Virus record (IMG/VR): IMGVR_UViG_3300034072_000926
Location: 186,001-250,000 of that record
Length of the DNA stretch: 64,000 nucleotides
Direction: 5' to 3' (one strand)
The position numbers and the translations under genes were made by a program. Shown piece by piece: positions 4,206-63,430 of this stretch (the stretch's first letter is position 1; each line of letters begins with the position of its first letter). The notes under the pieces are model-generated. The model was not told the DNA's origin and searched no databases. It saw nothing but the letters and a program-made list of their open reading frames with translations.

Positions 4206-4207
4206 TG

Positions 4208-5087: not shown

Positions 5088-5095
5088 TCTCCTAC

Positions 5096-5123
5096 TTTAT
5101 AGCATCTATTTCCAAACTGTCAA
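5096..5123 (-). promoter_or_regulatory. Sigma70-like early promoter
   Basis: TTGACA-N16-TATAAA on the minus strand. Confidence 0.65.
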
Positions 5124-5161
5124 CAAAGAGTATTCCATAAAGTGCATGGTTTATAGCCCAC

Positions 5162-5167
5162 TAAATA
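5162..5167 (+). promoter_or_regulatory. T4-like late promoter (TAAATA)
   Basis: TAAATA about 20 nt upstream of the gp25-like gene; the motif recurs before other structural genes. Confidence 0.55.
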
Positions 5168-5188
5168 TGGTTACATTGGAGGATAGAT

Positions 5189-5569
5189 ATGGCACGTAGA
5201 GCAATTATCGGGTTCAGCACCCAAGAGATGCAGGGCAAACGAGGTTGGACAGTATATGACGTCGATCTTATCAAGCGTGACCTCCTAAACCATTTTCACA
5301 CCCGTAGGGGCGAACGTCTCATGCTGCCAACCTATGGCACTATCATTTGGGACAAACTCTTTGAACCCTTCACCGAAGGCACCAAGCAAGAGATTGTTGA
5401 TGATGTTATAAGGATCGTCAGAACTGACTCTCGCGTAAAGCTTCAGGCAGTTGATGTTTCTACCAGCACCTATGGAATTTCGGTGGCAATCGAACTGAAG
5501 TATGAGCCTTGGGATGCCGTCGGCACCTTTGCTCTCGAGTTTGACCGTCGCTCTCTTGAGAGGATCTAA
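5189..5569 (+). CDS. Baseplate wedge protein, gp25-like
   Basis: 'LIKRDLLNHFHTRRGERLMLPTYGTIIWDKLFEP' matches the GPW/gp25 pattern. Confidence 0.85.
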   Translation: MARRAIIGFSTQEMQGKRGWTVYDVDLIKRDLLNHFHTRRGERLMLPTYGTIIWDKLFEPFTEGTKQEIVDDVIRIVRTDSRVKLQAVDVSTSTYGISVAIELKYEPWDAVGTFALEFDRRSLERI

Positions 5570-5572
5570 CGA

Positions 5573-11700: not shown

Positions 11701-14700
11701 GCTAGCAGTCAGAATCTTGATCTTTCCGCCTCGATCCGTTTTGCTGATTCCGAATATAGCAGGTTCAAGGCTAAGTTCCAGCAGAAGATTGTCAGCTACG
11801 TCAATCAAAACCGTCTCACCAATGCTACTTCGTATGACACTTGGATCAACACAGCTCTTGAAGAGATCAACAAGGGTAAAACAAAGCTCTTCCCATTCTA
11901 CCTCAGTGGTATGGCAAAGAACGAGTCGAATCTATTGCCAACTTTCATTCCACCGACTCCTAGCTTCCTCGGCGTGCATCCCCTGTATGCCCCTGAGATT
12001 GTCTCTGACGAGGTCTCGGACGAGGATGGCAACACAGTCACTGTCTGGTATGTAAGGGGACATGACGGGTCTCTAACCCTGGGTGAGAACGAGATTAGCG
12101 CTCGTGTCTTGATGGCACTCGAGGAACGCATCTTCAACAGCATTCCTGCTTCGATCCGTATGCGCGAACGTCCTGTTTGTGATCCATTGCTTGCTTATGG
12201 TGACCAATTCCGTTCCGCTGATTACACCTATGACGAGTATCTTCAGATCCTTCGTCCTTCGTTTGAACGTTGGGCAATTGCAAATCGTCTAGATGTAAGG
12301 ACGAACGAATACTATGACAGTGATGACCTATGGACTTGGAATTGGTCTCAGATCCTAACCTCTGATGGTCAGAAGGTTCCAGGTCACTGGCGCGGGATCT
12401 ACGAGAAGTTCTTTGGAACTCAGCGTCCTGACATAATGCCTTGGGAAAGCCTTGGTTTCTCGATAAAGCCCGATTGGTGGGATGATCGCTACGGCAGTGC
12501 TCCTTACACAAGCGAGAACTTGGTTCTTTGGAATGACCTTGAGAATGGTTATATCCACAGCGGTCCACGTCAGGGCTTCAATGCTCACTTGGCTCGTCCA
12601 GGTCTATCACAGCATATCCCTGTTGACCTTCGTGGTCGTCTACGTCACCCAGGTCCACGCTGGAGGCCATCTGATACTGGTCCAAATCTAGACCAGTCTT
12701 GGACCGAAAGCCAGTATGTTGAATGGGAAGACACTAGCGCAGATGATGTGGTTCTAGGCTGTGGAATCTTGCCGACCCTTCCGCTAGTCTCTGATCGTAA
12801 GGCTGATTGGAACTATGGCGACATGGGCCCAACTGAACAGAACTGGAGGCGTTCAAGCACCTTCATGTTTGCCGCTGCTACTGCGAGCTATCTCATGAAG
12901 CCAGCTGCTTTCGTCGAACTTGGTTGGAATACTCAAGACATTGAACTGTTCTTTGCCGGTTCGGTCAATGAGCAGTGGATGAACCAGGATACAATGGGTC
13001 GCCCGAGCAACAGCGAACTACAAGTTCACGGCGAAGTCTTGGATGATCTCAGCCTTGTGACCAAGGTCGGTATTCAGCAGTGGGTTAGCGATTATTTGGC
13101 AAACCGCAATTCGGAGATTAATTCGAATCTAGCTGAAAAGGTTCGTGGTTTGGGATCGCAGCTCTCCTATAAGGTAGGTGGGTTCTCGGACGCAACGACT
13201 CTCATCACAGTTAGCGATGCATTTGGTCGTATTCCAAGCGAAGACGTCACGATCTCAAGCTACAGATCACCAAGCATCCGCGAGGAAACCTATAGCGGTC
13301 TAGCAATTGAGTATAAGTCGAATGGTTATGAGATTTACGGCTATGATACCCTGAATCCATATTTCTATACCATCCCTGCTGATAAGAACGGCAGCAAGAT
13401 CTCCGTTGGTAGCGGCATTAAGGCATCTAACCCTACTCCACTTTGGAGGGGCGCGACCTATTATACCGTGAACATCGTTGTGAAGCATGAGGACAACTTC
13501 TACCGCGCACTAAAGACCCACACAAGCTCTACGTTCTTCGAACCATCTTACTGGACTCAGGTATCTCGTCCGCAGTATGCAGACGGTGGCGCGCTTGTAT
13601 GGTATCTTGGTCAGCCAGTATCTCCGGTAATTGAGAAGGTTGCGTATGGCACTATCCTTAAGACTCCGCAGCAGGTCGCAGATTTTGTCAATGGCTACAA
13701 CCGCTACCTCGAGTCGAGGGGTTGGAAGTTTGACTCGTTGAATGATGATCAGGATGATATCCGCGATTGGAGGTCTGCACTTACAAGTTTCATCACTTGG
13801 AGCAGTCAGACTGATCGAGAGGAAGGCGACTTCCTCTCACTTAGCCCAAGTTCTAAGCTGATTCAGTATTCGACTGATCACGGCACTATTCAGCCGGTTG
13901 AACAGATCATCAATGGTCTCTACGCAATCGTGAACCAGAATGGTCAGCCAATTGATCCGAAGGATACTAGGGTCGTTCGTAACGATGGCAGCATCTCGAT
14001 CTACTGCGATTCGACAACTAGCGGTGTCTTCGGTCTGCGACTCTACGTGAGCGAGATTGAACATGTTCTTGTGTTCAACAATAAGACGATATTCGGCGAT
14101 ACCATTTATTCGCCGCTGCTCAACATCAAGCAGCCTCGTATCCGTCTTCAGGGCTTCAAGACTGTTGGTTGGAAGGGTCGTGTTGATGCACCTGGCTTCA
14201 TTGTAACTGGCGACACTTTGACTCCAAACTTCGAGCGTGCTGCGGATGACTTCCGTCGTTTCTTCGAAATTGAGTCGATGGAGAACAAGTCCCTACAGGA
14301 TCGCGCCCGTGCAAACTTCGGCTATGAGGAACGTGAATACCTCAACAATCTGCTCTTGACCTCAACTAACCAGTTTGAGTTCTATCAGGGTATGATTCAG
14401 CAGAAGGGTTCGCCAACCTCAATGCGTCGTCTCCTTCGCTCCAACTTCATTCGCCACAACAAGGGTTTGAAGCTGTTTGAGGAATGGGCATTCCGAGTTG
14501 GCGACTACGGCGGACAAGAAGTTACGCCGCAGCTGGATATCCAGATCCGTCAGAGCGAATTCAAGAACAACCCACAGTTGATCAAATTCACTAATGCTTC
14601 TGAGGCAAATACCTACGGTGTCATCAATGTCGTTGACACTAAGAATGCTGATGGCTCCTTGAATGATCTAGATGATCGTTGGAACTGGCGTCCAGATATC

Positions 14701-52045: not shown

Positions 52046-53095
52046 TCAGACCTTTGTGTATGACGCCTGTAGCACTGTTGCGTAATCGTTAGGATTCTTT
52101 GCTAGGTTGGGTAGATTCATCTCCTCACAAAACTTGAGGAAGTAAATGCCCACGCCTTGCTTCCTGGGAGCCTGACAGGCCTCGATAATCACAGAATCCA
52201 TAAGTTCTTTGATATCGTCAGGCTGTTGCCTCAGGTCGATGAGATGTTGATTTCGCTTGTAGGCGTCAAGAACCTTGATCATGTTGCCCTCGTGGTCTTC
52301 CCATTCGTCTTGCATGAACATTGTCCAATCGTAGCCACGACCATGACGATCCTCAAAAGCTTCCTTGATACCTGGCTTCTTAGAAGAGCCATTCTCGCGA
52401 ACGCCTGGCTTGGCAGACATGATATTATCCGATGCGTCGCCGCGGATAATCTTCTTGAAGAGTTCATAGTCCGGATTAGGAGGTGTTAGTTCCTCCTTGA
52501 CCTTCTTCTTAACCTCTCGTTCCTTGCCCGTCTTGCCGATGAACTTTTCCGTAACGGTCTTTTCCTTAACGGCGGGTTTACCGTTCTCATCTAGCACGCT
52601 ATCAAGGGAGATTGTAACGCCCTTCACACCATCATGGATGCGAACATTGGGAGCGAGCAGCTGGTAGAAGTCTGAGTCACTCGACATAATAATGTGCTGA
52701 TCGTCTGGATGCAGGTCGATCCAACGAGCAATGAAGTCGTCTGCCTCGCAACCCGGCGATTCCAAGATGGTCACATTCGTGCGCTTGCGGAGGAATTCAA
52801 TAAAGACTTTCATCGTGTCGAAGAAGAACTCATCCTCTTCACGTTCGCTCTTTGTCTTGAGTGCATCCTGAACCCGACGATGTGCCTTGTATTCGGGATA
52901 GACGTCTTTGCGCCACGAGCTCTTATCCAGAGCCACGACCACGTGAGTGGCCTTATATTCGCGCCACAGTTTCCTGAGGCTGTTGAAGGCAATCTGAAGA
53001 GTGTTACCAGCTTTCAAAGCGGCATCACCTTGGATGACATGCCTTGCGCGGTGAAACAGATTGCTCAAGTCAACGATTGCATATGTTGCAGTCAT
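52046..53095 (-). CDS. rnh: RNase H / 5'-3' exonuclease (T4 rnh-like)
   Basis: IVDLSN, SWRK..YPEYK, EADD, SSDSDF.QL, GDASDNI. Confidence 0.85.
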   Translation of the reverse strand: MTATYAIVDLSNLFHRARHVIQGDAALKAGNTLQIAFNSLRKLWREYKATHVVVALDKSSWRKDVYPEYKAHRRVQDALKTKSEREEDEFFFDTMKVFIEFLRKRTNVTILESPGCEADDFIARWIDLHPDDQHIIMSSDSDFYQLLAPNVRIHDGVKGVTISLDSVLDENGKPAVKEKTVTEKFIGKTGKEREVKKKVKEELTPPNPDYELFKKIIRGDASDNIMSAKPGVRENGSSKKPGIKEAFEDRHGRGYDWTMFMQDEWEDHEGNMIKVLDAYKRNQHLIDLRQQPDDIKELMDSVIIEACQAPRKQGVGIYFLKFCEEMNLPNLAKNPNDYATVLQASYTKV

Positions 53096-54015: not shown

Positions 54016-54546
54016 TTACTTTACTGGAGTATTTACCCCAATGAGGTTAAGAATCTGGGTCATACGGTCAACTTCAGGGTTATTGGTCACACGACTGTAG
54101 GTAATCTGCTTCCTATTCAGAAGATTGACCATCGCGGAATCGACCTCAACGGCCTCTTCTGCAGTCTGATTCCTACCAGCAGTCTGGTAAGCAAAGTCGC
54201 GACCGATTAAGAAGTTGTGATTGTCGTATGAGTTGAAGACGTCCATGACGAACGGTTCAAAGGTTTCATAATAGTTCTCAGGTGCATAGACCAAACCAAT
54301 AGGTAATGGACTATCCGTGATCACATACTCGACCTGACCCTTGAGACGCTCAAGGCGACGATTCTGTTTCGCGAGAATGTAGAGCTGGTCACCAAGGACA
54401 TTGTGACGCTTTTCCCACGTCATGTCCTTGGCATACTCAGTCACAAGCTCAACGGGAATCTGTAGCTTCTTCATTTCGAAGAAGAGACCAGCGGCAGTGG
54501 TTGACTTGCCTGCTCCTGGCCCGCCCCAGATATTGATTACCTTCAT
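54016..54546 (-). CDS. P-loop nucleotide kinase (NadR/AAA_28-like)
   Basis: GGPGAGKST, EYAK, ITDSPL, GRNQ. Confidence 0.7.
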   Translation of the reverse strand: MKVINIWGGPGAGKSTTAAGLFFEMKKLQIPVELVTEYAKDMTWEKRHNVLGDQLYILAKQNRRLERLKGQVEYVITDSPLPIGLVYAPENYYETFEPFVMDVFNSYDNHNFLIGRDFAYQTAGRNQTAEEAVEVDSAMVNLLNRKQITYSRVTNNPEVDRMTQILNLIGVNTPVK

Positions 54547-54812
54547 ATATTCCTCCACCCGACAATCTCAACTTCTTCACGGCTATGAATGAAATGAACT
54601 TTGAGATAATCTGGCAATTGTTGGTATTGAGCAGGTGAAATATAAGAACCAGTTGGCCTACGAATTCCATAAACCATGATAGGATAAGCAGACAAGGCTA
54701 TCATAATCTTGATCGAATCAGCTGTCGAAATAGTATAGAGACTTTCAAGAGGACGATAGATATCTAGTTCCATCGTCTTAGGCGCTTTGGCCTTCCTAAA
54801 CCAACCGAACAT
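54543..54812 (-). CDS. Hypothetical protein
   Basis: Likely start MFGWFR at 54812. Confidence 0.5.
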   Translation of the reverse strand: MFGWFRKAKAPKTMELDIYRPLESLYTISTADSIKIMIALSAYPIMVYGIRRPTGSYISPAQYQQLPDYLKVHFIHSREEVEIVGWRNI

Positions 54813-54813
54813 C

Positions 54814-55743
54814 TTACTTTCCAATAATATTGCCAAAGCACCAAGTGTGAACACGTAGGGCTACGGAATAACCACGCTCCACTGCCTGTTCAGCAATAAT
54901 AGCCTGATGGCTTTCCTGCATCTCACGGTCAGCACCAACAGGCATAATCCAAACGTCCCAATCAATACCGGCTTTGCGATATGCTTCAGTTGCCCTCGCA
55001 ACTTCATCCCAAGAACGATCAGTGCCGTTGCTGACGAACTTCAACTGACCATGATCGCTGATTGCCTTATAGTGGGCAAGAACGTCTGGCTTGATCGCGT
55101 TGTCCCAAAGTTCGCCCGAGAGATAGAGCTTAGGGCTTACAGACCAGAACAGTTCTGTATCACAAGCCACTGCATCATGATCTGCATCGAGCAGCTTCGT
55201 TGGACGCTCCCTGAAATCTCCATTGAAGAAGTTCTCAAAAGCAGGGCGAGGCTTCTGCGTTCCATTTGTTTCAATGGTAACGAAACGAGGCATGTTGTAA
55301 CGCTTGCGGAAGTTCTGCATCACATCAACAACTGCGGTCTGGCTCATCATTGGTTCGCCGCCGGTGAAAGCCATGTGGTGCCACTGCTTCGAGGTAGGAT
55401 GTTCAAACTTACCACCAGGTAGAGTTGCTTCAATCTTGTCACAGATTTCAGCAGCCGTGTTCTGATGAGCAAGGTGTGAGAACCTCTTGGACCATGAGTA
55501 GCTCGAATCACAGCCCCTGTGGAAAACTGGAAGAGCTTCCATAGACTTGTATTCCGAAGGATCAATCTTCAGATAGTCCAGGTCGTAGGTCTCTGGCTTA
55601 TCGGGCTGTTCCTGACCGAAGCCCGCACATTCGAAGTTGCAACCCCAAACTCGCAACCATGCTGTTGGACGACCGGTGTAAGCACCTTCACCCTGGAATG
55701 TTTGTCCGAAGATCTCGGAGTATCGATATTTCTTTTCAGTCAT
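54814..55743 (-). CDS. queE: 7-carboxy-7-deazaguanine synthase (radical SAM)
   Basis: SEIF.TFQGEG..TG.P..WLR..GCNFEC...GCDS, FTGGEP, IETNGT, SVSPK, R.H. Confidence 0.85.
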   Translation of the reverse strand: MTEKKYRYSEIFGQTFQGEGAYTGRPTAWLRVWGCNFECAGFGQEQPDKPETYDLDYLKIDPSEYKSMEALPVFHRGCDSSYSWSKRFSHLAHQNTAAEICDKIEATLPGGKFEHPTSKQWHHMAFTGGEPMMSQTAVVDVMQNFRKRYNMPRFVTIETNGTQKPRPAFENFFNGDFRERPTKLLDADHDAVACDTELFWSVSPKLYLSGELWDNAIKPDVLAHYKAISDHGQLKFVSNGTDRSWDEVARATEAYRKAGIDWDVWIMPVGADREMQESHQAIIAEQAVERGYSVALRVHTWCFGNIIGK

Positions 55744-56243
55744 GCTTTCCACCATTCCTCGTAGGGAAAGATCACCCAGGAATCATCTTCGCTGCGATTG
55801 ATCTCTCGACCTGCATAATTGGGCTCGAAGAGATCCTGGCCAATGTTGTTCCACAATACTGCAGACTTGAGCTCGTTGGAGCAATCATATTCGTCCGCAT
55901 TATCTAGGTGGCACAGGATTTCATCCAGCTGGTCCACTACATTACGGAGAGTATCCCCGCCATCGCAAATATCATCTACGAGTAGGACCTTTTTCTTTGC
56001 CTTGATCTTCAGCGCAACATCGTTGATTTCAGATGCCTGACTGACCTTGCGATCACGAAGAGAATAGTTGATCACTTCGAGGGGCTTGCCCAGGTAGTGG
56101 CTCAACATTGTGGCGGGCACCAATCCCCCGCGAGCAATACCGACGATGATATCTGGCATGAAAGCATCCAGGGTCATCTGGCGCAGGATCTCTTGAAGGT
56201 CACCGCGCAATTGGGTATTGGTGTAAATGATCTTGTTGGGCAT
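55740..56243 (-). CDS. Type I phosphoribosyltransferase (xanthine/guanine PRT-like)
   Basis: GIARGG, PRPP loop VLLVDDICDGGDT, WVIFPYE. Confidence 0.85.
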   Translation of the reverse strand: MPNKIIYTNTQLRGDLQEILRQMTLDAFMPDIIVGIARGGLVPATMLSHYLGKPLEVINYSLRDRKVSQASEINDVALKIKAKKKVLLVDDICDGGDTLRNVVDQLDEILCHLDNADEYDCSNELKSAVLWNNIGQDLFEPNYAGREINRSEDDSWVIFPYEEWWKA

Positions 56244-56545
56244 TAGCACCACCTCATCTTGAAGAGCATTGCTTCCCTGATATCTAGTTCGACCAACACA
56301 TATTCGTAAATAGTGATTGCTCGATGATCAGGGAAGCAAGTCCAAATCCAATCCATAGCCTCCGAAGCCTCCATCACAAGAAAGAAGTTTCGGACGACTT
56401 GCATTGCTTCACGCTGTCCTACTTTTGGTTTGCCCCAAGTCATGTTCTTGACCATCAGGTCAACAGCATGGTTGGATTCATCCTCAGTTAGACCTAAGAC
56501 CATCATCTCAGGAATCTTAGGATCGTAGATAGCGTGAGGCAACAC
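56243..56545 (-). CDS. Small 'FKL-tail' family protein
   Basis: LDIREAMLFKMRWC. Confidence 0.55.
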   Translation of the reverse strand: MLPHAIYDPKIPEMMVLGLTEDESNHAVDLMVKNMTWGKPKVGQREAMQVVRNFFLVMEASEAMDWIWTCFPDHRAITIYEYVLVELDIREAMLFKMRWC

Positions 56546-56548
56546 GGA

Positions 56549-57310
56549 TTAATTGTGGCCCTTCATGCTCAGCATGATCTTGTAGAACTCGTCCTTCAGG
56601 TGAGCATCTTCACGGAACTTGCCACGCATAATTGCAGTGGTCATATCCGATTCGTGCTCGCGAACACCGCGATGCGTCATGCAGTGGTGTTCGGCCTTCA
56701 GGACAACCGCGACGTTTTCAGTCTCGGCGTATTCGACCAGAGCATCAGCAATCTGAGTGGTCATCTCTTCCTGAATCTGAGGACGTTCGCTGATCCAGTG
56801 GACCAGACGATTGAACTTCGACAGGCCAATGACTTTATCCTCAGGGAAGATACCAACCCAGCACTTGCCAACAATATTCTGGAAGTGATGAGCACAAGTG
56901 GAACGGATCGAGATCGGACCTGCGGTGTAGAGATCCTGATAGCCGATGTTGGGGAACGAAGTGATCTTCGGAGCAGCCGAATAACGACCGCCGTAGGTTT
57001 CGTTCACATACATCTTGGCTACGCGACGAGCCGTGCCATTGGTGTTGTGGTCATGATCAGTGTCGATGACCAGGCTGCGGAGAACCGCTTCCATCTTCTC
57101 AGTGACTTCATCGACTAGAAGAGCACGCTCTTCATCGCTGATGAACTTTGAGATGTTGTCGTTGCAATGGAACTGTTGACCAGCTTCAATCAAACGGGCG
57201 CGGATTTGTTCAGATACCGGAATTGGTGTGTCGGTAGCTGTAACCTCTTGCCCGAAAGTGCATTCACAATCGTTAGAGCCGCAGCTCTCGGTAAGTTTGG
57301 TGTCGGACAT
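56549..57310 (-). CDS. folE: GTP cyclohydrolase I
   Basis: TARRVAKMY, STCAHH, GLSKFNR, RPQIQE, HHCM..RGV. Confidence 0.95.
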   Translation of the reverse strand: MSDTKLTESCGSNDCECTFGQEVTATDTPIPVSEQIRARLIEAGQQFHCNDNISKFISDEERALLVDEVTEKMEAVLRSLVIDTDHDHNTNGTARRVAKMYVNETYGGRYSAAPKITSFPNIGYQDLYTAGPISIRSTCAHHFQNIVGKCWVGIFPEDKVIGLSKFNRLVHWISERPQIQEEMTTQIADALVEYAETENVAVVLKAEHHCMTHRGVREHESDMTTAIMRGKFREDAHLKDEFYKIMLSMKGHN

Positions 57311-57338
57311 TATCTGTCTCTCCTTATAGTTGTTCTAT

Positions 57339-57367
57339 ACCATACTTAGAAACTGGCATAGTGTCAA
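57339..57367 (-). promoter_or_regulatory. Sigma70-like promoter of folE
   Basis: TTGACA-N17-TATGGT. Confidence 0.5.
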
Positions 57368-57378
57368 TTTATTAGCTG

Positions 57379-57819
57379 TTAATTGCTCAGCTTTAGCATG
57401 AGCGCACACTTATTTAGAAAAGGTGCGATATCGGCTTCATTCTCGAAGAAAATCTCAAAGAAACCGCTTCCTGTGCCCTTAGAGATCATCGAACCAGTTG
57501 TTGAATCCCAGTCCTTGTCCCTAGAGTAGCTCTTGTCCATCGTCCAGAATCCGGTGCAGTTTTCATCACAATAGCGATGAATATCCTCCATAACGTCATC
57601 AATATCAGCATGGTCATATGAACCAAAGTCAGACACGTTGCTGGTATTAAACTTGATCAGAACCTTATTGCGAAGGAACTTCTGAGCAAGCTCTTGGAAC
57701 TCAGGCTTTACAGCCCAAGTTCTCCAGTTGCGGGGACGTCCATCCTCTTGAGGAACTTCCATCATCCGTGCTTCGATGAAACGCTGGCGACGAATTACTC
57801 CAACAGTTAGGTCGGTCAT
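57379..57819 (-). CDS. Hypothetical protein (divergent FKL-tail-like)
   Basis: YCDENCTGFW...FFENEAD...ALMLKL. Confidence 0.55.
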   Translation of the reverse strand: MTDLTVGVIRRQRFIEARMMEVPQEDGRPRNWRTWAVKPEFQELAQKFLRNKVLIKFNTSNVSDFGSYDHADIDDVMEDIHRYCDENCTGFWTMDKSYSRDKDWDSTTGSMISKGTGSGFFEIFFENEADIAPFLNKCALMLKLSN

Positions 57820-58889
57820 GCGAGCAGCCTATCTAGCATCGGGTTACAGGAGAGATACTTATCAAGCAGCTTCTGCTTTTGCTTGGCCATCTTATCCTGG
57901 AACAGGTGGTAATTCTTAATCACATGCGTGAGAGCCTTGACCATCGGATAACGATGAGCCGTATAGTAGTCCCAGTCTGCTGTCCAATCACTCGGATAGA
58001 GCAAATCGTATTCATACATCTCAGTGTAGGATAGACGGTTAGGCAAGAACGGAATCGCTCCGACCAATACACCTTCCATTGCCGAGATACCTAGGGTTTC
58101 CTGCAAATTAGCGGAGAAGACAACCTTGGCTTCTCCCAACAATTTGTGGTATTCATCCTTTGTGAGCTTCTTGTCCTGACAGACCACAAACTCAACATTC
58201 GGCATTTCCTGTGCGAGGTCACGGAAGATCTCCACTTGCTTCTCAGGAGCAATTCGATGCGGGAACAAGACGAGGTCACGCTTAGGCATACCCTCAAATG
58301 CCCTCAGGCTGTCAACGAGTGCAGAGTGGGGCTGTCCGCTTATCACGCAACGTTCCTCGGCTGTTCCTCTTGCAGGGAGTAATGTGTTGAGAAACAACTC
58401 CTTGTGGAACTCGGTGGCAAAATAGTTGAAGTGACTAGCGTAGAACAGTCCGCGCTCAGTGTTGTAGGTCCAACGCTTGTCCCGAATCAAACGACCGAGG
58501 AAGTCCTGAGGATCATAAGAACCTGCATGCCACATGCTATGGATCTCAACGGGAATCTGCATCAGTTCACTCATATAGCGAACCTGTGTGATACCAGTGT
58601 GCCACGCATCGGTGAACAGAACCTTGTCACCTGCCTTCACGACACCCTTCTGGAAATACTCGACTAGTCGATTGACCTGAGAGTTCTTCCAGATATTGGT
58701 TGCAAAGAAATCCAAGAAGGCACCTTCGGTTGGTGCGCTGCTCGTCTGTTCACCCGCGATATTGTAGACAGTGACATCCTTGCCACGTTCCTGAGCCGTC
58801 TGCTCAATTAGCTTTGGGATACCATCGAACCACTGACCAGTGTATCGGGTTTCCAATGGCTCTAGGGCCATGATAAAAATGTTTGTCAT
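57816..58889 (-). CDS. GT-B fold glycosyltransferase (GT4-like)
   Basis: 'HRIAPEKQ' and the Ex7E motif 'QETLGISAMEG', then 'PNRLSYTEM'. Confidence 0.8.
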   Translation of the reverse strand: MTNIFIMALEPLETRYTGQWFDGIPKLIEQTAQERGKDVTVYNIAGEQTSSAPTEGAFLDFFATNIWKNSQVNRLVEYFQKGVVKAGDKVLFTDAWHTGITQVRYMSELMQIPVEIHSMWHAGSYDPQDFLGRLIRDKRWTYNTERGLFYASHFNYFATEFHKELFLNTLLPARGTAEERCVISGQPHSALVDSLRAFEGMPKRDLVLFPHRIAPEKQVEIFRDLAQEMPNVEFVVCQDKKLTKDEYHKLLGEAKVVFSANLQETLGISAMEGVLVGAIPFLPNRLSYTEMYEYDLLYPSDWTADWDYYTAHRYPMVKALTHVIKNYHLFQDKMAKQKQKLLDKYLSCNPMLDRLLA

Positions 58890-58890
58890 A

Positions 58891-59202
58891 TCAGCACCAA
58901 ATTAGTTTGAACATCAGAGCGTCGTCAAGTTTCTCAAAATACCAGACAACCTCATATTCTCGGTAATAATTGTCAACGTCCCAATCGTATCCACCACCGG
59001 CCATAAAATCAATTATATCCGATTGGTCAGGATCTACGAACTTGACTATCCAAGCCCAACGACCTCTGTCTTCTTCGAAGAGCCACTTCATAGATTCAAC
59101 ATCTGATGACTCGAGTGCCTCTTTGTTGTGATTCATAAGAGCCCGACGTAGATCGTCGTCCATATCATGAAGGGTGTAGGCAACTTGATGATCCCAGAAC
59201 AT
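58891..59202 (-). CDS. Small 'FKL-tail' family protein
   Basis: FEKLDDALMFKLIWC. Confidence 0.6.
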   Translation of the reverse strand: MFWDHQVAYTLHDMDDDLRRALMNHNKEALESSDVESMKWLFEEDRGRWAWIVKFVDPDQSDIIDFMAGGGYDWDVDNYYREYEVVWYFEKLDDALMFKLIWC

Positions 59203-59203
59203 G

Positions 59204-59452
59204 TCACATCCACGTTAGCTTGAACAACATTGCGGAATTATCATCCCAAATGTCGATATAGAATATCAGATAGGTATGTAGGCCCTCTCCTAGATCACGC
59301 TGCTCATGCAAAGCATAATCGTCATACTTGATATTGCGCTGATCCAGCCATTCCTTAACCACTGGATTGAGTCTTAGATCAAAATCAGCCGGGTCATCAG
59401 GATGGGCAAAGTTATGCCAATCGTAGAGAGGTTTACGAAGCTGGAAAATCAC
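59204..59452 (-). CDS. Small 'FKL-tail' family protein
   Basis: VKEWLDQ...DDNSAMLFKLTWM. Confidence 0.6.
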   Translation of the reverse strand: MIFQLRKPLYDWHNFAHPDDPADFDLRLNPVVKEWLDQRNIKYDDYALHEQRDLGEGLHTYLIFYIDIWDDNSAMLFKLTWM

Positions 59453-59820
59453 TTCTTGACCGGATACTCAGCAAAGCTTCCGTTCTCACCGTCTTCGCTC
59501 ACCTCAATAGTGATGTGACGATTAGGGAACTTTGTGGTGATCTCAGCATAGAGTGCATCACTGATCATTTCACAGGACTTATAATCCAGTTCGAGGGTGC
59601 CGTTGCCGTAGAGGCTTTCGAGCCAACGCTTGAACTGAATGAACTCCAGGTCGCGATCATCATGGAACACTTCAATCCAGACCTTGAACTTGAACATATG
59701 ACGATGGTCATAGCCAAGGAACTTCACGTCTGCGAGGTTCGGGTCTGTTAGTGCGGCGGGGTATTTGTGGACACCTTCTTTTGCGAACGTGACCCAAATC
59801 ATCTTAAAGTCTTCTGTCAT
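59449..59820 (-). CDS. QueD/6-pyruvoyl-tetrahydropterin synthase-like T-fold protein
   Basis: H...HRH metal-binding motif, 'SCEM', 'VSEDGENG'; adjacent to folE and queE. Confidence 0.65.
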   Translation of the reverse strand: MTEDFKMIWVTFAKEGVHKYPAALTDPNLADVKFLGYDHRHMFKFKVWIEVFHDDRDLEFIQFKRWLESLYGNGTLELDYKSCEMISDALYAEITTKFPNRHITIEVSEDGENGSFAEYPVKK

Positions 59821-59857: not shown

Positions 59858-60190
59858 TTATCTGGAGAGCTTATTGATCAAGGCAGCGACTAGAAGTCTG
59901 CGATACACTGAGAATCGCTTCAAAGTGGGATTGAGGAAGATACGGATACCCCAATGATAATGGCTGACAATGGGTGCAGCCTTTTGATTCTTCCGCTTTC
60001 TCACACTTTGTCTGTCAACTGGATTATACTCAGACTTTATGACTGGCTCATGAACAATCATGAAGGCGCCGGGAATGAAGCGGTGCATTATAGAGTAGAT
60101 GCGCTTATACTCTTCAAAAGTGGTGTGCATCTTGAGAAATAGGTGATCAGGATGTCTGCCACCCGAATAGTTGGTAATATCTTGAATCAC
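59858..60190 (-). CDS. Hypothetical basic protein
   Basis: Coupled ORF. Confidence 0.5.
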   Translation of the reverse strand: MIQDITNYSGGRHPDHLFLKMHTTFEEYKRIYSIMHRFIPGAFMIVHEPVIKSEYNPVDRQSVRKRKNQKAAPIVSHYHWGIRIFLNPTLKRFSVYRRLLVAALINKLSR

Positions 60191-60396
60191 ATCCAGGTCA
60201 ACTTGAAAAACATTGCATCCTTGGGATTAGGAATCTGAATATACGCTCTTTGATCCATGAAACCCAGACTTAGGTGATATTTGATGCCATTACGATACAA
60301 CCAAGAGTAGAACTGGCCACTCAAGGTTCTTACCTTAGATTCCTTGACCACGATATAGGTATAGTGATCATCTTCTCGCAATTCAAAGGTCGTCAT
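60187..60396 (-). CDS. Small 'FKL-tail' family protein
   Basis: PNPKDAMFFKLTWM. Confidence 0.6.
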   Translation of the reverse strand: MTTFELREDDHYTYIVVKESKVRTLSGQFYSWLYRNGIKYHLSLGFMDQRAYIQIPNPKDAMFFKLTWM

Positions 60397-60629: not shown

Positions 60630-60976
60630 GCGAGACCCTTAAAACCGAGACGATCGTTAGCGACGCGACGATCAAAATGGCCAAGGAAGATATTCTTGGA
60701 AGGTATATTCCAGGCTAGAACGAAATGTCGAGCAGTCTTGAGATCTTTGAATTTCAAGTAGCTTTCTTTGCGACCCTTGGCTCTGTTCTGATACTTGACC
60801 TCGACAACGTGTTGAGTCTTGGCTACGCCATTGGCTTCTAGCCAGCGTTCCAGGTCGGGATTCATCTCACGTTTCCAACCACTGCCATAGATCCTCATGT
60901 TGTTAGTGGCCTCGGATCCTTGAACCCAACGCCAATGAAACCGACGATCAAGTATGATTGAAATCTCTATATCCAT
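60626..60976 (-). CDS. Small 'FKL-tail' family protein (divergent)
   Basis: LERWLEAN...FKDLKTARHFVLAW. Confidence 0.55.
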   Translation of the reverse strand: MDIEISIILDRRFHWRWVQGSEATNNMRIYGSGWKREMNPDLERWLEANGVAKTQHVVEVKYQNRAKGRKESYLKFKDLKTARHFVLAWNIPSKNIFLGHFDRRVANDRLGFKGLA

Positions 60977-61215
60977 GTCAACTTGAATAGCATCGCGTCT
61001 TTCAAGCTGTCAAAATAGATTGCAGAAACCTTGCTAAATGGAGCCTCGCCATACCAATATTCGAGGTTCTGATCTTTCAGCCATTCCTCAATATCCTCAT
61101 TGAGGCGATAGGTCTTACCGTAATAGGGATCAGCAGAACTCTTCCATCGACTGTCGAGGTGACGATGGCGACCGTCCAACATAACGAGATGTTTGTTTGT
61201 GAACATTATAGCCAC
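60967..61215 (-). CDS. Small 'FKL-tail' family protein
   Basis: IEEWLKDQ...FDSLKDAMLFKLTWI. Confidence 0.6.
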   Translation of the reverse strand: MAIMFTNKHLVMLDGRHRHLDSRWKSSADPYYGKTYRLNEDIEEWLKDQNLEYWYGEAPFSKVSAIYFDSLKDAMLFKLTWI

Positions 61216-61418
61216 CTTAGTTTGAACATAGCGGCCTTCTTACGATCCGTTATGTGTATGATTGCTTTGAAATTGGATAAGAGACTAAAGACGTATTCAG
61301 TCTTCGTGACTACGAGCCAGAGTTTAACATCACGCCGCAAATGTAAAGAAGTCTGCCATTCATTGACTTGCTGAGACTCGATAAACTCTGATCCAAGTTC
61401 GAACAGAGTATCAAGCAT
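61206..61418 (-). CDS. Small 'FKL-tail' family protein
   Basis: Likely start MLDTLF at 61418; TDRKKAAMFKLRWL. Confidence 0.55.
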   Translation of the reverse strand: MLDTLFELGSEFIESQQVNEWQTSLHLRRDVKLWLVVTKTEYVFSLLSNFKAIIHITDRKKAAMFKLRWL

Positions 61419-61989
61419 CCTTAGCCTTCTTCGCGTAGGTATTCCAGATATGCAGATCGAAATCAGCAACACTCATACCCGACGCATCAGCGAGCTTGAG
61501 GAACTCTTTCTCCAATTCAGCATACTTCTTACCACCTGGTGTTCCGACCTGAGTCGTTAGTCCGAGGTCGCGCATGTGACGAATCACATGGGTATCAAGA
61601 CAAGCGATGCGTTGATTGGCACGGGTATGGAGCATGAAATAGCGGGCAGTCTTCGCCCCGGCTCCGTGGATCGCTTCGAGGTCTGCAATCGTGCAGGTCT
61701 TGAGATCAGTGCCGAGACTCTGACTGAATGCCCTAGATAATTTGTTGTATTGACCCAGCTTGGCGTCCTTGATCGAGTCAAGTAACATGCCACATTGTTC
61801 CAAGACAGCAACGACTTGGAAAGGTGTCTGGAAGTTGGGAAACTCTGCTCGACCAGCTGATAGAAAAGCTTCGAGGTGTTTAGCCTGAGTAACCGCTGTC
61901 TTTCCTGCTACACAGAGACAGAATAGCCAGAACTCTTGAAGCTCTGCATCGGTGCGGTCAAACTTTGTGACATCTGTTGGATCAATCAT
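61411..61989 (-). CDS. HhH DNA glycosylase/lyase, archaeal-type Ogg (8-oxoG)-like
   Basis: HhH 'IHGAGAKTARYF' with Lys, 'ACLDTHVIR' with Asp, 'KKYAELE...FDLHIW'. Confidence 0.7.
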   Translation of the reverse strand: MIDPTDVTKFDRTDAELQEFWLFCLCVAGKTAVTQAKHLEAFLSAGRAEFPNFQTPFQVVAVLEQCGMLLDSIKDAKLGQYNKLSRAFSQSLGTDLKTCTIADLEAIHGAGAKTARYFMLHTRANQRIACLDTHVIRHMRDLGLTTQVGTPGGKKYAELEKEFLKLADASGMSVADFDLHIWNTYAKKAKDA

Positions 61990-62023: not shown

Positions 62024-62533
62024 CTATCCGATATGTTTCCAAGTTTTCCTTGATTTTACGTTCTTGATTGTAGAAACATTAACCGAGAATTTATCAGCCA
62101 ACTGAACATTCGTTAGATTAGAATTCCTAATAAAACGGATATCATTTTCTTTGAGGACCGAACAACCGTTTCTTTCTCCGATTGCATTCCTACCTCGAGC
62201 AATACAGTCATCAGAATTGTCTTTATGCGTTCCGATAGATAAATGAGATGGTTTCACACATGATGGATTATCACAGGAATGTCGAATGAGCATTCCGATA
62301 GGTATGTTTCCGTTATGTGCTTCGTAAGACAATCGATGAGCAAAGATTTGCTTCCCGTTCAGGATTACAAATCCATAACCTTTTCTATCACGAGAGCCTG
62401 TCCAGATCAAGCAATCGTTGACCTCTTTAGAGTTTAGATCTATTCTACATTTAGGAGAACAGACTTTCTTAGTCGAGTTGCTATTCACTTGCATTTCATT
62501 AGAACATACAAGACATTGGACAGTGTAAGACAT
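62024..62533 (-). CDS. HNH homing endonuclease (HNH_3-type) with N-terminal Zn finger and C-terminal HTH
   Basis: CLIWTG...GYG...AHRLSY...RHSCDNPSCVKPSHL..GT..DN. Visibly more AT-rich than its neighbours. Confidence 0.85.
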   Translation of the reverse strand: MSYTVQCLVCSNEMQVNSNSTKKVCSPKCRIDLNSKEVNDCLIWTGSRDRKGYGFVILNGKQIFAHRLSYEAHNGNIPIGMLIRHSCDNPSCVKPSHLSIGTHKDNSDDCIARGRNAIGERNGCSVLKENDIRFIRNSNLTNVQLADKFSVNVSTIKNVKSRKTWKHIG

Positions 62534-62544
62534 CGATCTTGAGA

Positions 62545-62670
62545 TTGAGGAGGTGGGGGCCACGCAAACCCCCGCAAGCTGCTCTGGAACTACCGTTCCT
62601 GCGCGAAGAAAGGAATCACCTCCTCAAGAGTAAATTGGGCAGCTTGCTTTGTGGGGCACTAGGCCCCACA
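62545..62670. ncRNA. Candidate structured (pseudoknotted) RNA upstream of the HNH gene
   Basis: Interleaved perfect stems 62545-62555/62617-62627 and 62574-62582/62639-62647, plus three hairpins. Confidence 0.4.
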
Positions 62671-62674: not shown

Positions 62675-63430
62675 TTACTTCTTGCGAGCAGGAAGAATGA
62701 ACTTGTATTCGGCAACACCCGAAGCCATCGTGATCTGCAGAGCGCCACGGCTCGAGAACTGAAGCTTGAGGTTTTCGTCAGCACCCAGCTTGAGGATCTT
62801 CAGCACTGGATCAATGCCCCAGTGAAGATCGCCACCCAGGTCACCCGAGACATCGTCAGCGATGGTTAGGTAAGCGCGGTGCATGGACGAACCTTCGTCG
62901 CCGATGTAGAAGCGCAGCTCGTTCTTGCCTTCTTCGTTCTTGACGGTCTTGACCATGAAGAAGTTTTCGAAGGTGCTATACAGACCTGCAAGAGCCTGCA
63001 GTTCCTTGAGCTTGCTGGCCGAAGGATCAACCTCGACGTCCCAGGTCGTGCCCAGGAACTTAGCCTGGTCAGGAATCAGATCCTTCGACATCAGACGGTA
63101 AGCTGCATTGCTCTTGGTGTTCTTGTTGTTGAACACGATTTCCTCAGGGGTATCAACGCCACCACGATCGCGACGCTTAATGTCGACGGTCACCCCGTCG
63201 CCCTTGTAGAGAGCACTGGTAACCAGACCCTGCAGAAGACCAAGCTGCGACAGACCGAATTCACCCTTGAGGGCTGGTTCGACGGTGGTCAGCTCGCCCT
63301 TGACAATGACAGTGCGATCATTGTCCATAGCTTCGATGATGGTCTTGTCATCAGTGCCGGTGATCTTCACCGTGTCGATGAAGCCAAGGCCACCAGTGTG
63401 CCTTACGATGTCCTGAAATGTTTCACGCAT
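62675..63430 (-). CDS. Probable DNA polymerase sliding clamp (gp45/PCNA-like)
   Basis: About 250 aa alpha/beta protein ending 'YKFILPARKK', near the DNA polymerase. The fold call is an inference. Confidence 0.5.
   Translation of the reverse strand: MRETFQDIVRHTGGLGFIDTVKITGTDDKTIIEAMDNDRTVIVKGELTTVEPALKGEFGLSQLGLLQGLVTSALYKGDGVTVDIKRRDRGGVDTPEEIVFNNKNTKSNAAYRLMSKDLIPDQAKFLGTTWDVEVDPSASKLKELQALAGLYSTFENFFMVKTVKNEEGKNELRFYIGDEGSSMHRAYLTIADDVSGDLGGDLHWGIDPVLKILKLGADENLKLQFSSRGALQITMASGVAEYKFILPARKK

What the first reader, a model, noticed from the sequence alone, without database searches (positions are those of the whole stretch)
54016..59820. 7-deazaguanine cluster with PRTase, nucleotide kinase and glycosyltransferase but no visible transglycosylase
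Seen: QueD-like, GT4-like glycosyltransferase, folE, purine PRTase, queE and a NadR-like kinase, all co-oriented between the DNA polymerase/clamp genes and RNase H. Known: FolE, QueD and QueE make 7-carboxy-7-deazaguanine (CDG), which phages usually insert into DNA post-replicatively through DpdA. No queC, dpdA or tgt is in this window. Inference: the PRTase and kinase could instead convert the deazapurine base into a nucleotide for direct incorporation by the polymerase, and the glycosyltransferase could add a sugar, giving an undescribed hypermodified base.
Basis: partly seen in the sequence, partly recalled or inferred. Interest (0 to 1): 0.72.

Follow-up and report, generated by a model that had tools for sequence, protein, structure and literature searches.

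The report
Deazaguanine DNA-modification cluster; transglycosylase encoded elsewhere

Summary
The genes are real, co-oriented on the minus strand and conserved in over ten related phage contigs: FolE, a QueE-like radical-SAM enzyme, a purine PRTase, an AAA_28 kinase and a GT4-fold glycosyltransferase. The "QueD-like" gene is DpdL, the proposed 7-carboxy-7-deazaguanine decarboxylase of Cellulophaga phage phiST. It carries the LxxxHRHxF signature. The true QueD lies at genome 60118-60675.

The 465-kb genome does encode a divergent 583-aa TGT-fold protein at 103171-104922. It has DSGGFQ, HFLGVG and YDVSSP motifs, Z 16-17 to solved TGTs, and remote homology to DpdA2. In Pseudomonas phage PA5oct and two metagenomic phages this gene sits directly beside the same DpdL-GT-PRTase-QueE genes.

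So the "no transglycosylase, hence nucleotide route" inference is not supported. The system is a dispersed DpdA-dependent, QueC-less, DpdL-type deazaguanine module.

Three points remain open. DpdL and the GT4 are tightly linked across many large phages, and other jumbo phages put NDP-sugar pathway genes in this module, which suggests an undescribed glycosylated deazaguanine. The PRTase is usually adjacent to or near QueE. It keeps the N7-contacting Asp of 6-oxopurine PRTases, so I favour salvage of released guanine. The DpdA subfamily appears unreported in the papers I read.

The parts
54016..54558 (-). P-loop nucleoside/nucleotide kinase (AAA_28; phrog_2107 'thymidylate kinase'), 180 aa
   Evidence: Profile vs PDB gives only a weak match to deoxyguanosine kinase 2jas (E 0.005). 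In L010 it lies between QueE and the PRTase. Found only in the megaphage clade and Phosso.
54814..55755 (-). QueE-like radical-SAM 7-carboxy-7-deazaguanine synthase, 313 aa; overlaps the PRTase gene by 16 nt
   Evidence: phrog_2076 1.9e-52, Fer4_12/Radical_SAM, N-terminal QueE NCBIfam matches. 78-84% identical in relatives.
55740..56252 (-). Small 6-oxopurine-type phosphoribosyltransferase, 170 aa; the only PF00156 gene in the genome
   Evidence: PF00156 1.8e-18. Profile vs PDB: P. horikoshii purine PRTase 1vdm 7.9e-22, S. solfataricus GpT-1/2, then HGPRT/XGPRT. VDDxxD[ST]G motif with an invariant third Asp (D97) in 10 diverse homologues. Single copy.
56549..57310 (-). GTP cyclohydrolase I (FolE), 253 aa
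   Evidence: PF01227 4.7e-47; NF006824 1.1e-50; phrog_2197 1e-53.
57379..57819 (-). 146-aa protein of unknown function; 1-3 tandem paralogues in relatives between GT and FolE
   Evidence: No Pfam/PHROG/NCBIfam hit. jackhmmer finds it only in the megaphage clade and Phosso gp225. Atlas search uninformative.
57816..58889 (-). GT4-like retaining GT-B glycosyltransferase, 357 aa
   Evidence: AF2 pLDDT 92. Foldseek and VIA give Z 24-25 to sucrose-phosphate synthase, BshA, GlgM and MshA; tetrahydrobiopterin glucosyltransferase 5zes is at Foldseek rank 4. E272-x7-E280 motif. The BUCT-ZZ01 homologue passes the Pfam Glycos_transf_1 cut-off. Adjacent to DpdL in Phosso, PA5oct, ACP17 and BUCT-ZZ01, near it in L017, and one gene away (DpdA2 between them) in X1.
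59449..59820 (-). DpdL (QueD-like T-fold protein; proposed CDG decarboxylase), 123 aa
   Evidence: phrog_17812 4.4e-34. Homologue of phiST CGPG_00067 = DpdL. DpdL signature L35-x3-H39-R-H41-x-F43 as defined in PMC10516641.
56243..56545 (-). Small ORF (100 aa) of a paralogous family ending ...AMLFK(L/M)xW
   Evidence: A homologue lies at the same place in L005.
58891..59452 (-). Two more small paralogues (103 aa and 82 aa) of the same ...MLFKLxW family, between GT and DpdL
61411..61989 (-). Ogg/EndoIII-like helix-hairpin-helix DNA glycosylase, 192 aa; a possible accessory part
   Evidence: PF22175 4.7e-8. The GAGAKTA...LDTHV stretch keeps the Lys and Asp of the HhH-GPD active site (read from the sequence). 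Conserved between the clamp gene and DpdL in all megaphage relatives.

Best explanation
The window holds the biosynthetic core of a DpdA-dependent, QueC-less ('DpdL-type') 7-deazaguanine DNA-modification system. Its parts are scattered over four places in a 465-kb phage genome.

Shown by homology: FolE (window), QueD (genome 60 kb) and QueE (window) convert GTP to 7-carboxy-7-deazaguanine (CDG).

Inferred from the phiST precedent: DpdL (window) removes the carboxyl group to give 7-deazaguanine or a close derivative.

Fold, motifs and gene neighbourhood shown, activity inferred: a divergent 583-aa TGT-fold transglycosylase at genome 103171-104922, distantly related to DpdA2, exchanges guanine in replicated phage DNA for this base.

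Inferred from tight DpdL-GT linkage and from sugar-pathway genes in the same module of other jumbo phages: the GT4 enzyme, and probably a second GT at genome 447767-449080, adds a sugar to the deazaguanine, before or after insertion.

Inferred, about even odds: the PRTase is an accessory guanine (6-oxopurine) salvage enzyme. It would convert the guanine released by base exchange into GMP, and the kinase would carry this toward GDP/GTP. That would remove a competitor of the near-isosteric 7-deazaguanine and refill the GTP pool that FolE consumes.
For: Pathway genes.

DpdL identity.

Hidden transglycosylase:
- PA5oct gp168 homologue in G000 (30% identity, 3e-61).
- The family of at least 2107 proteins has invariant DSGG-Q, H-LG and S-D motifs.
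- AF2 model pLDDT 86. The top 50 Foldseek PDB hits are all tRNA-guanine transglycosylases, with VIA Z 16-17 over about 290 residues.
- hhalign to ACP17 gp123 gives prob 88%, E 2.9e-6 across the three motifs.
- gp123 is 34-36% identical to the VH7D and nt-1 proteins. I take these to be the tested DpdA2 of PMC10516641, which names no locus tags.

Neighbourhood: the gene is adjacent to the cluster in PA5oct (DpdA-GT-DpdL-x-x-PRT-QueE), in L011/L012 and in L017. It is also present in G001, G003 and Phosso. BUCT-ZZ01 holds every part contiguously: QueE-PRT-x-QueD-FolE-GT-DpdA2-DpdL-GT.

Search controls worked: phrog_887 finds the 9g DpdA and phrog_20335 finds the phiST DpdA3.

GT role: the genome has no ThyA/dCMP-hydroxymethylase homologue, so no 5-hydroxymethyl-pyrimidine acceptor made that way. 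In the L048/L049 phages, a GT and NDP-sugar genes (dehydratase/epimerases, aminotransferase, TPP enzyme, methyltransferase) lie between QueD and PRT-QueE.

PRTase as guanine salvage:
- The nearest solved relatives are 6-oxopurine PRTases.
- The third Asp of the PRPP motif is invariant.
- Carbon at position 7 blocks HPRT salvage, and guanine exchange by TGT is reversible whereas 7-deazaguanine insertion is not (PMC8136771).
- TubE rejects 7-deazaguanine (PMC6112128).
- The PRTase is absent from Phosso, ACP17 and X1, which keep DpdA, DpdL and GT.
Against: - No enzyme here has been assayed.
- DpdL's decarboxylase activity was never demonstrated. Cui et al. saw no dDG on co-expressing DpdL with DpdA.
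- The DpdA-like protein matches no Pfam or PDB sequence profile. Its link to DpdA2 rests on one hhalign hit that weakens to E 3.6e-4, prob 37%, against a four-sequence DpdA2 profile.
- In this genome the DpdA gene is 137 kb from the cluster.
- The GT's acceptor is unknown. Its closest structural matches act on small molecules, not DNA, and 7-deazaguanine offers no obvious major-groove attachment site.
- Among the records searched, the PRTase occurs only in DpdL-bearing phages. In phiST, which has 100% dDG, it sits in an RNase H-PRTase-dNMP kinase-x-RNR operon. That equally fits a base-to-deoxynucleotide route.
- The reading of the conserved Asp is my inference from HGPRT enzymology. I could not compare TubE or ToyH.
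Confidence: 0.68

Rival explanations
1. The PRTase attaches ribose-5-phosphate to CDG or 7-deazaguanine. The kinase, the phage RNR and host NDK turn this into a deoxynucleoside triphosphate. The phage polymerase incorporates it directly, and the TGT-fold protein is irrelevant or only a back-up.
For: - Precedent: TubE is a CDG-specific PRTase in a FolE/QueD/QueE cluster that lacks QueC (PMC6112128).
- The PRTase sits adjacent to or near QueE in many arrangements.
- In the records searched it occurs only in DpdL-type phages, including phiST, whose G is fully replaced. There it lies in an RNase H-PRTase-dNMP kinase-x-RNR operon, and a MazG-like pyrophosphatase lies in the phiST deazaguanine cluster.
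- G000 encodes RNR and MazG.
- DpdA3 activity was never shown (PMC10516641).
Against: - In the complete or near-complete records searched, every PRTase-bearing phage also encodes a TGT-fold DpdA.
- Phosso, ACP17 and X1 keep DpdA, DpdL and GT without the PRTase.
- The PRTase keeps the Asp that contacts N7 in 6-oxopurine PRTases. HPRT-type enzymes do not salvage 7-deazaguanines (PMC8136771).
- A neighbouring carboxylate on CDG would be repelled by that Asp (my inference).
- PA5oct DNA was inferred to be modified in GA/GG contexts rather than at every G (PMC12191111).
Confidence: 0.12
2. The glycosyltransferase is not part of the deazaguanine chemistry. It glycosylates something else, such as a pterin made from the FolE product as cyanobacterial BGluT does, a host envelope polymer, or a protein. 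The DNA base would then be plain 7-deazaguanine, as in phiST.
For: - The top structural matches are small-molecule GT4 enzymes, including UDP-glucose:tetrahydrobiopterin glucosyltransferase (5zes, Foldseek rank 4).
- phiST makes dDG without this GT.
- L003 and L007 relatives lack the GT.
- 7-deazaguanine has no hydroxyl or amine side chain to glycosylate.
Against: - The GT is adjacent to or within one gene of DpdL or DpdA in six unrelated phage lineages.
- Other jumbo phages place a GT and an NDP-sugar pathway between QueD and PRT-QueE.
- A GT4 enzyme (HuiG) glycosylates the 2-amino group of a 7-deazapurine base in huimycin.
- PA5oct is sensed by nucleases specific for hypermodified DNA.
Confidence: 0.2
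3. The cluster makes a free 7-deazapurine nucleoside or nucleotide as a small molecule, for example an antimetabolite or a counter-defence molecule, rather than a DNA base.
For: CDG pathway plus PRTase plus kinase without QueC resembles the tubercidin logic. A 2026 preprint uses absence of dpdA/tgt as its rule for secondary-metabolite deazapurine clusters.
Against: - A DpdA-like gene is present, so that rule is not met.
- No GMP reductase, UbiD decarboxylase, Nudix or HAD phosphatase was seen in the cluster.
- The location is the replication module, between the clamp and RNase H.
- PA5oct DNA is itself modified.
Confidence: 0.04

Closest known systems
Cellulophaga phage phiST dDG system (FolE, QueD, QueE, DpdL, DpdA3; Cui et al. 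2023, PMC10516641)
   Same: QueC-less CDG pathway plus DpdL with the LxxxHRHxF motif. A TGT-superfamily transglycosylase. A P-loop kinase next to DpdL in phiST (AAA_18). A PRTase of the same family elsewhere in phiST.
   Different: The transglycosylase here is not DpdA3 (phrog_20335 absent). It is a 583-aa protein remotely related to DpdA2. phiST has no GT4 partner. Here the genes are dispersed over four loci.
DpdA2 of Vibrio phages VH7D and nt-1, with homologues in Acidovorax phage ACP17, Xanthomonas phage X1 and Synechococcus phage BUCT-ZZ01 (phrog_10773)
   Same: DSGG(F/L)Q, H(F/L)LGVG and SYD(V/S)(S/T) motifs. hhalign E 2.9e-6 to ACP17 gp123. In ACP17, X1 and BUCT-ZZ01 the DpdA2 lies beside the same GT and DpdL.
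   Different: Only remote similarity: no BLAST or HMM hit between the families. The protein is about 140-160 residues longer, with insertions. No member has been assayed. I found no description of the family in the papers read.
Pseudomonas jumbo phage PA5oct gp162-gp168
   Same: Homologues of DpdA-like (gp168), GT (gp167, 40% identity), DpdL (gp166, about 50%), PRTase (gp163) and QueE (gp162) in one block next to the clamp homologue gp170. Its DNA is reported as G-modified (PMC12191111).
   Different: PA5oct has all parts contiguous and an epimerase-like fragment (gp164). No AAA_28 kinase homologue was found. The identity of its modified base is unpublished in the papers I could read.
Tubercidin and toyocamycin biosynthesis (TubE/ToyH PRTases on CDG/preQ0)
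   Same: FolE-QueD-QueE with a PF00156 PRTase. The tubercidin pathway also lacks QueC and decarboxylates CDG chemistry.
   Different: Those pathways lack any TGT/DpdA and carry GMP reductase, a UbiD decarboxylase and a Nudix or HAD phosphatase. Decarboxylation is by UbiD at the nucleotide level, not by a T-fold protein. The product is a secreted nucleoside.
T4 hydroxymethylcytosine glucosylation (gp42, gp1 kinase, gp56, alpha/beta-GT)
   Same: The concept of a modified base plus a GT-B glycosyltransferase plus a dNMP kinase in a T4-like replication module.
   Different: The genome has no ThyA-family hydroxymethylase. The GT here is GT4-like, and the T4 glucosyltransferases are not among its top 50 structural matches in either list. 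The base is a purine analogue inserted by base exchange.

Membership tests
Phage DpdA-dependent 7-deazaguanine DNA modification system | GTP-to-CDG enzymes FolE, QueD and QueE are encoded | tested here: met
   FolE and QueE are in the window. QueD is at genome 60118-60675 (PF01242 45 bits; phrog_2389 1.3e-35).
Phage DpdA-dependent 7-deazaguanine DNA modification system | A TGT-superfamily DNA transglycosylase (DpdA) is encoded | tested here: met
   Genome 103171-104922. AF2 model with VIA Z 16-17 and all top 50 Foldseek hits being TGT. Invariant DSGGFQ, HFLGVG and YDVSSP motifs. hhalign to the DpdA2-family protein ACP17 gp123, E 2.9e-6. Adjacent to the cluster in PA5oct, L011/L012 and L017. 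PF01702, phrog_887, phrog_7068 and phrog_20335 themselves do not hit it.
Phage DpdA-dependent 7-deazaguanine DNA modification system | Guanine in virion DNA is replaced by a 7-deazaguanine derivative | not testable with these tools
   Indirect only. PA5oct, which shares the module, has restriction-resistant DNA interpreted as G-modified (PMC12191111).
DpdL (proposed CDG decarboxylase) | QueD-like T-fold protein with LxxxHRHxF in place of QueD's CxxxHGH | tested here: met
   L35-G-Y-D-H39-R-H41-M-F43, conserved in 7 homologues except that the residue before the first His varies (D or P). The motif definition comes from PMC10516641.
DpdL (proposed CDG decarboxylase) | Homology to phiST CGPG_00067, and co-occurrence with FolE, QueD, QueE and DpdA but not QueC | tested here: met
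   tblastn 33% identity, 9e-9, landing on CGPG_00067. No QueC in the genome; the weak PF06508 hit is NadE.
DpdL (proposed CDG decarboxylase) | Catalyses decarboxylation of CDG to 7-deazaguanine | not testable with these tools
   Also not shown in the literature. Heterologous expression gave no dDG.
GT4-type retaining GT-B glycosyltransferase | Two-Rossmann-domain GT-B fold closest to GT4 enzymes | tested here: met
   pLDDT 92. Z 24.6 to 6kih, 24.4 to BshA 3mbo, 23.6 to GlgM, over 300-317 aligned residues.
GT4-type retaining GT-B glycosyltransferase | Sequence-profile membership (Pfam Glycos_transf_1 or Glyco_trans_1_4 above cut-off) | tested here: not met
   No Pfam hit for the window protein. 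The homologue in BUCT-ZZ01 (26.5% identity) passes PF13692 and PF00534. An E-x7-E motif (E272...E280) is visible in the sequence.
6-oxopurine phosphoribosyltransferase (Gpt/Hpt type) | Type I PRTase domain with a PRPP motif acidic pair followed two residues later by the N7-contacting Asp (DDxxD[ST]G) | tested here: met
   PF00156. D93, D94, D97 and G99 are invariant in 10 homologues at 21-55% identity. The nearest solved structures are archaeal purine PRTases, HGPRT and XGPRT. The role of the third Asp is from my knowledge of HGPRT enzymology.
6-oxopurine phosphoribosyltransferase (Gpt/Hpt type) | Uses guanine, hypoxanthine or xanthine rather than a 7-deazapurine | not testable with these tools
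   Needs an enzyme assay.
TubE/ToyH-type deazapurine nucleoside pathway | No TGT/DpdA in the genome (rule used in bioRxiv 10.64898/2026.04.15.718813) | tested here: not met
   A TGT-fold DpdA-like gene is present.
TubE/ToyH-type deazapurine nucleoside pathway | Tailoring enzymes: GMP reductase, UbiD decarboxylase or adenylosuccinate enzymes, and a Nudix or HAD phosphatase | tested here: inconclusive
   None is among the cluster ORFs scanned. The rest of the genome was not searched for them.
T4-type pre-replicative hydroxymethyl-pyrimidine glucosylation | ThyA-family dNMP hydroxymethylase | tested here: not met
   PF00303 has no match in the genome at E<=0.1, and the control genomes did match.

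The most novel reading that the evidence does not exclude
Two unexcluded novelties could hold together. First, the DpdL-GT4 pair yields a sugar-bearing 7-deazaguanine in DNA, which would be a purine counterpart of glucosyl-hydroxymethylcytosine. Second, the PRTase, kinase and RNR form a TubE-like nucleotide branch, so part or all of the modified base enters through the polymerase. [quoted passage not shown] The probability given is for the second, more radical part. The glycosylated base alone I put at about 0.4.
Probability: 0.12. Interest if true: 0.85.

Novelty: new variant of a known kind. Interest (0 to 1): 0.55.

Why it matters
7-deazaguanine DNA modifications protect phages from restriction enzymes, and one report cited here extends this to CRISPR-Cas9 in vitro. 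They are currently catalogued by looking for known DpdA subfamilies.

- This case shows that a large clade of 400-470-kb phages, PA5oct-like Pseudomonas jumbo phages and other uncultured phages use a long, very divergent DpdA that Pfam and PHROG profiles miss. The family has at least 2100 homologues in metagenomes. DpdA-based surveys would therefore under-count these systems or misread them as DpdA-less.
- The conserved pairing of DpdL with a GT4 glycosyltransferase, and the insertion of whole NDP-sugar pathways into the same module in other jumbo phages, predicts an undescribed glycosylated deazapurine in DNA. This can be tested directly in cultured phages (Phosso, PA5oct, ACP17, X1, BUCT-ZZ01).
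- The recurrent PRTase gives a concrete hypothesis for how phages that replace many guanines deal with the released guanine. It might also explain why heterologous DpdL + DpdA expression failed.

Tried and rejected
- megablast of the region against cultured phages: no hit.
- PF01702 (TGT) on the genome found nothing. This proved an insufficient test, because the validated 9g DpdA1 also fails Pfam TGT.
- DpdA1 profiles (phrog_887, phrog_7068) and the DpdA3 profile (phrog_20335) are absent from G000, its relatives, Phosso and BUCT-ZZ01. The weak phrog_887 hit inside PA5oct gp168 (E 0.013) gave the lead.
- DpdA4 (PF20314) was not searched.
- The weak QueC hit turned out to be NAD synthase.
- Profile-versus-PDB sequence searches failed for the GT, DpdL and the DpdA-like family. 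Only structure prediction resolved the GT and the DpdA-like protein.
- hhalign of the DpdA-like family against a single 9g DpdA1 sequence was not significant.
- The kinase could not be assigned a substrate.
- The 146-aa protein stayed unexplained.
- The ORF at 54543-54854 (103 aa) has no homologue even in close relatives and may not be a gene.
- The full records behind L048-L050 could not be searched for DpdA.
- No supplementary tables of Cui et al. were available to see which ACP17 protein they called DpdA.
- I could not obtain TubE or ToyH sequences to compare their PRPP motifs.
- Literature searches found no paper linking a PRTase or a glycosyltransferase to phage 7-deazaguanine DNA modification.
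- Read mapping and complex prediction were not used, because neither would discriminate the hypotheses.

Full report
**Where the window lies.** The window is bases 186001-250000 of a 465,259-bp virus record that CheckV rates 100% complete. GC is 49% and the standard code fits. The nearest cultured relative is Sinorhizobium phage Phosso (469 kb). Several IMG/VR contigs of 417-462 kb are closer.

**The observation.** All genes lie on the minus strand between a 5'-3' exonuclease/RNase H-like gene (52046-53095) and a sliding-clamp homologue (62675-63430).
- FolE (56549-57310), a QueE-like radical-SAM enzyme (54814-55755), a PF00156 PRTase (55740-56252) and an AAA_28 kinase (54016-54558) are supported by Pfam, PHROG and NCBIfam hits.
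- The 357-aa protein (57816-58889) matches no profile. It folds with pLDDT 92 into a GT-B enzyme with Z 24-25 to retaining GT4 enzymes and has an E-x7-E motif. "GT4-like" is therefore right.
- The 123-aa "QueD-like" protein (59449-59820) is not QueD. Its cultured-phage homologues include Cellulophaga phage phiST CGPG_00067. Cui et al. named that protein DpdL, the proposed CDG decarboxylase behind 2'-deoxy-7-deazaguanine. The window protein carries their diagnostic LxxxHRHxF motif.
- The real QueD is at genome 60118-60675 among unrelated genes.
- QueC is absent; the only weak hit is NAD synthase.
- The gene set recurs in the same order in more than ten related contigs, and in shuffled order in distant ones. 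It is therefore a real, selected module.

**The missing transglycosylase.** Pfam TGT finds nothing in the genome. That test is weak, because the validated DpdA1 of phage 9g also fails it. PHROG models for DpdA1 and DpdA3 are negative too, with working positive controls.

The lead was a faint DpdA1 hit inside PA5oct gp168. That gene lies immediately beside PA5oct's homologues of the GT, DpdL, PRTase and QueE. G000 encodes a gp168 homologue of 583 aa at genome 103171-104922, next to a DnaB-like helicase gene.

Evidence that this protein is a TGT/DpdA relative:
- Its family has at least 2107 metagenomic members and no Pfam domain. It has invariant DSGGFQ, HFLGVG and YDVSSP blocks. From my knowledge of TGT enzymes, these correspond to the catalytic-Asp, substrate-pocket and nucleophile-Asp motifs.
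- An AF2 model (pLDDT 86) returns only tRNA-guanine transglycosylases among its top 50 Foldseek PDB hits.
- It aligns to bacterial, archaeal and human TGTs at Z 16-17 over about 290 residues.
- hhalign links the family to ACP17 gp123 (prob 88%, E 2.9e-6, all three motifs aligned).
- gp123 is 34-36% identical to the VH7D and nt-1 proteins. I take these to be the tested DpdA2 of Cui et al., who name no locus tags. The VH7D protein lies between FolE and a QueF-like gene.
- Against a four-sequence DpdA2 profile the link is weaker (E 3.6e-4, prob 37%).

The same family is present in G001, G003 and Phosso. It is contiguous with the cluster in PA5oct and in the contigs behind L011/L012 and L017. The T4-like cyanophage BUCT-ZZ01 has every part in one block: QueE-PRTase-x-QueD-FolE-GT-DpdA2-DpdL-GT. 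Its first GT has a 44%-identical homologue at genome 447767-449080 of G000.

The system here is thus complete but dispersed over four loci.

**The glycosyltransferase.** The GT and DpdL are adjacent in Phosso, PA5oct, ACP17 and BUCT-ZZ01, close in L017, and separated only by DpdA2 in X1. In G000 only small ORFs lie between them.
- The genome has no ThyA-family hydroxymethylase that could supply a hydroxymethyl-pyrimidine acceptor.
- In another widespread group of 230-346-kb phages, a GT, a methyltransferase, NDP-sugar dehydratase/epimerases, a DegT-type aminotransferase and a TPP enzyme lie between QueD and PRTase-QueE.
- A GT4 enzyme that glycosylates the 2-amino group of a 7-deazapurine base exists in huimycin biosynthesis.
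- PA5oct DNA resists five restriction enzymes and is attacked by nucleases that sense hypermodified G.
- I found no paper describing a glycosylated deazaguanine in DNA.

I therefore think a sugar-bearing deazaguanine is likely, about 0.4. The acceptor atom, and whether the sugar is added before or after insertion, remain unknown. The nearest structural relatives act on small molecules. One of them is a pterin glucosyltransferase, which keeps a non-DNA role alive.

**The PRTase and kinase.** The PRTase is the only PF00156 gene in the genome. It overlaps QueE by 16 nt. It lies next to or near QueE or FolE in every arrangement seen.
- Its nearest solved relatives are archaeal purine PRTases, then HGPRT and XGPRT.
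- Ten homologues down to 21% identity keep DDxxD[ST]G with the third Asp invariant. In HGPRT that Asp contacts N7 (my knowledge).
- Published work states that carbon at position 7 blocks HPRT salvage. It also states that guanine exchange by TGT is reversible while 7-deazaguanine insertion is not.
- TubE, the CDG-specific PRTase of tubercidin biosynthesis, rejects 7-deazaguanine.
- The PRTase is absent from Phosso, ACP17 and X1, which keep DpdA, DpdL and GT. It is therefore accessory.

My preferred reading is that it converts the guanine released by base exchange into GMP, which the kinase carries onward. A 465-kb genome with 49% GC releases a very large amount of poorly soluble guanine per burst. 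That guanine is nearly isosteric with the incoming base. This step is inference.

The counter-evidence is real. Among the records searched, the PRTase occurs only in DpdL-type phages. In phiST, whose G is fully replaced, it sits in an RNase H-PRTase-dNMP kinase-x-RNR operon. That also fits a route from base to deoxynucleotide. Cui et al. do not mention a PRTase.

**Comparison and novelty.** The system works like the phiST/ACP17 DpdL-type deazaguanine modification. It meets the sequence-level defining features of a DpdA-dependent system.

It differs in three ways: a long, very divergent DpdA subfamily that I did not find described, a conserved GT4 partner, and a recurrent PRTase and kinase. I rate it a new variant of a known kind.

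The striking claim of the finding, a DpdA-independent nucleotide route, is not supported. It retains about 0.12 probability as a parallel branch.

Noticed in passing
window 61411-61989 (-): An Ogg/EndoIII-like helix-hairpin-helix DNA glycosylase (PF22175, 4.7e-8) that keeps the catalytic Lys and Asp (GAGAKTA...LDTHV). It sits between the clamp gene and DpdL and is conserved at that spot in all megaphage relatives. In PA5oct and L017 that spot holds the DpdA-like gene. It could act on guanine or damaged guanine in DNA, or relate to host nucleases that sense modified G.
   Followed up: partly
window 56243-56545, 58891-59202, 59204-59452, 60187-60396, 60967-61215 (all -); also genome 51383, 177347, 218291, 321092, 322360: A family of ten small ORFs (68-110 aa) that all end in ...A(M/L)(L/M/F)FK(L/M)xW. 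Five of them are interspersed among the cluster genes. Function unknown.
   Followed up: partly
window 62024-62563 (-): An HNH homing-endonuclease-like gene (PF13392, 4.2e-12) lies between the clamp and the glycosylase. No BLAST homologue turned up in the relatives' loci, which would fit a mobile insertion.
   Followed up: no
window 54814-55755 (-): The QueE-like protein has its radical-SAM cysteines as C-N-F-E-C, then about 38 residues, then C-D-S. This is a long insertion inside the usual CxxxCxxC-type motif. Only the N-terminal 35 residues match the NCBIfam QueE models.
   Followed up: no
window 57379-57819 (-) and L003-L007 equivalents: The 146-aa unknown protein occurs as one to three tandem, diverged paralogues between the GT and FolE in relatives. 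This suggests a fast-evolving accessory factor.
   Followed up: partly
genome 447767-449080 (+) (L029:6768-8081): A second GT1/GT4-type glycosyltransferase (437 aa), 44% identical to the 447-aa GT inside the BUCT-ZZ01 deazaguanine cluster. Two GTs might add two sugars or two linkages.
   Followed up: partly
L048/L049 (JGI and ENA contigs of 338-346 kb), 1-9431: In another widespread jumbo-phage group the order is QueD, a GT (phrog_14945), a methyltransferase, an NDP-sugar dehydratase/epimerase, a DegT aminotransferase, a TPP enzyme, an epimerase, the PRTase and QueE. This is an unusual-sugar pathway sitting inside a deazaguanine module.
   Followed up: partly
L051 (phiST NC_020842 24000-33000): 4219-4647 (-): phiST, the phage with 100% dDG, encodes a PRTase of the same family in an RNase H-PRTase-dNMP kinase (PF21448)-x-RNR operon. 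The word 'phosphoribosyl' does not occur in the text of the paper that described its modification.
   Followed up: partly
L050 (NCBI GCA_013573015.1 contig), 1-12456: Another phage-like contig carries two phrog_2076-type or rSAM genes, FolE, PRTase, PTPS and a DAO-type FAD oxidoreductase together. This hints at yet another deazapurine derivative.
   Followed up: no
genome 400025-401032 (-) (L001:880-1887); L028:11083-12237 and L028:6273-6773: The phage encodes an NAD synthase (NadE), a CCA-adding/poly(A) polymerase-family enzyme, and a protein with a ribosomal L7/L12 C-terminal-like stretch.
   Followed up: no
window 54543-54854 (-): This 103-aa ORF, which overlaps both the QueE and kinase genes at its ends, has no homologue even in the closest relatives. 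It may not be a gene.
   Followed up: partly
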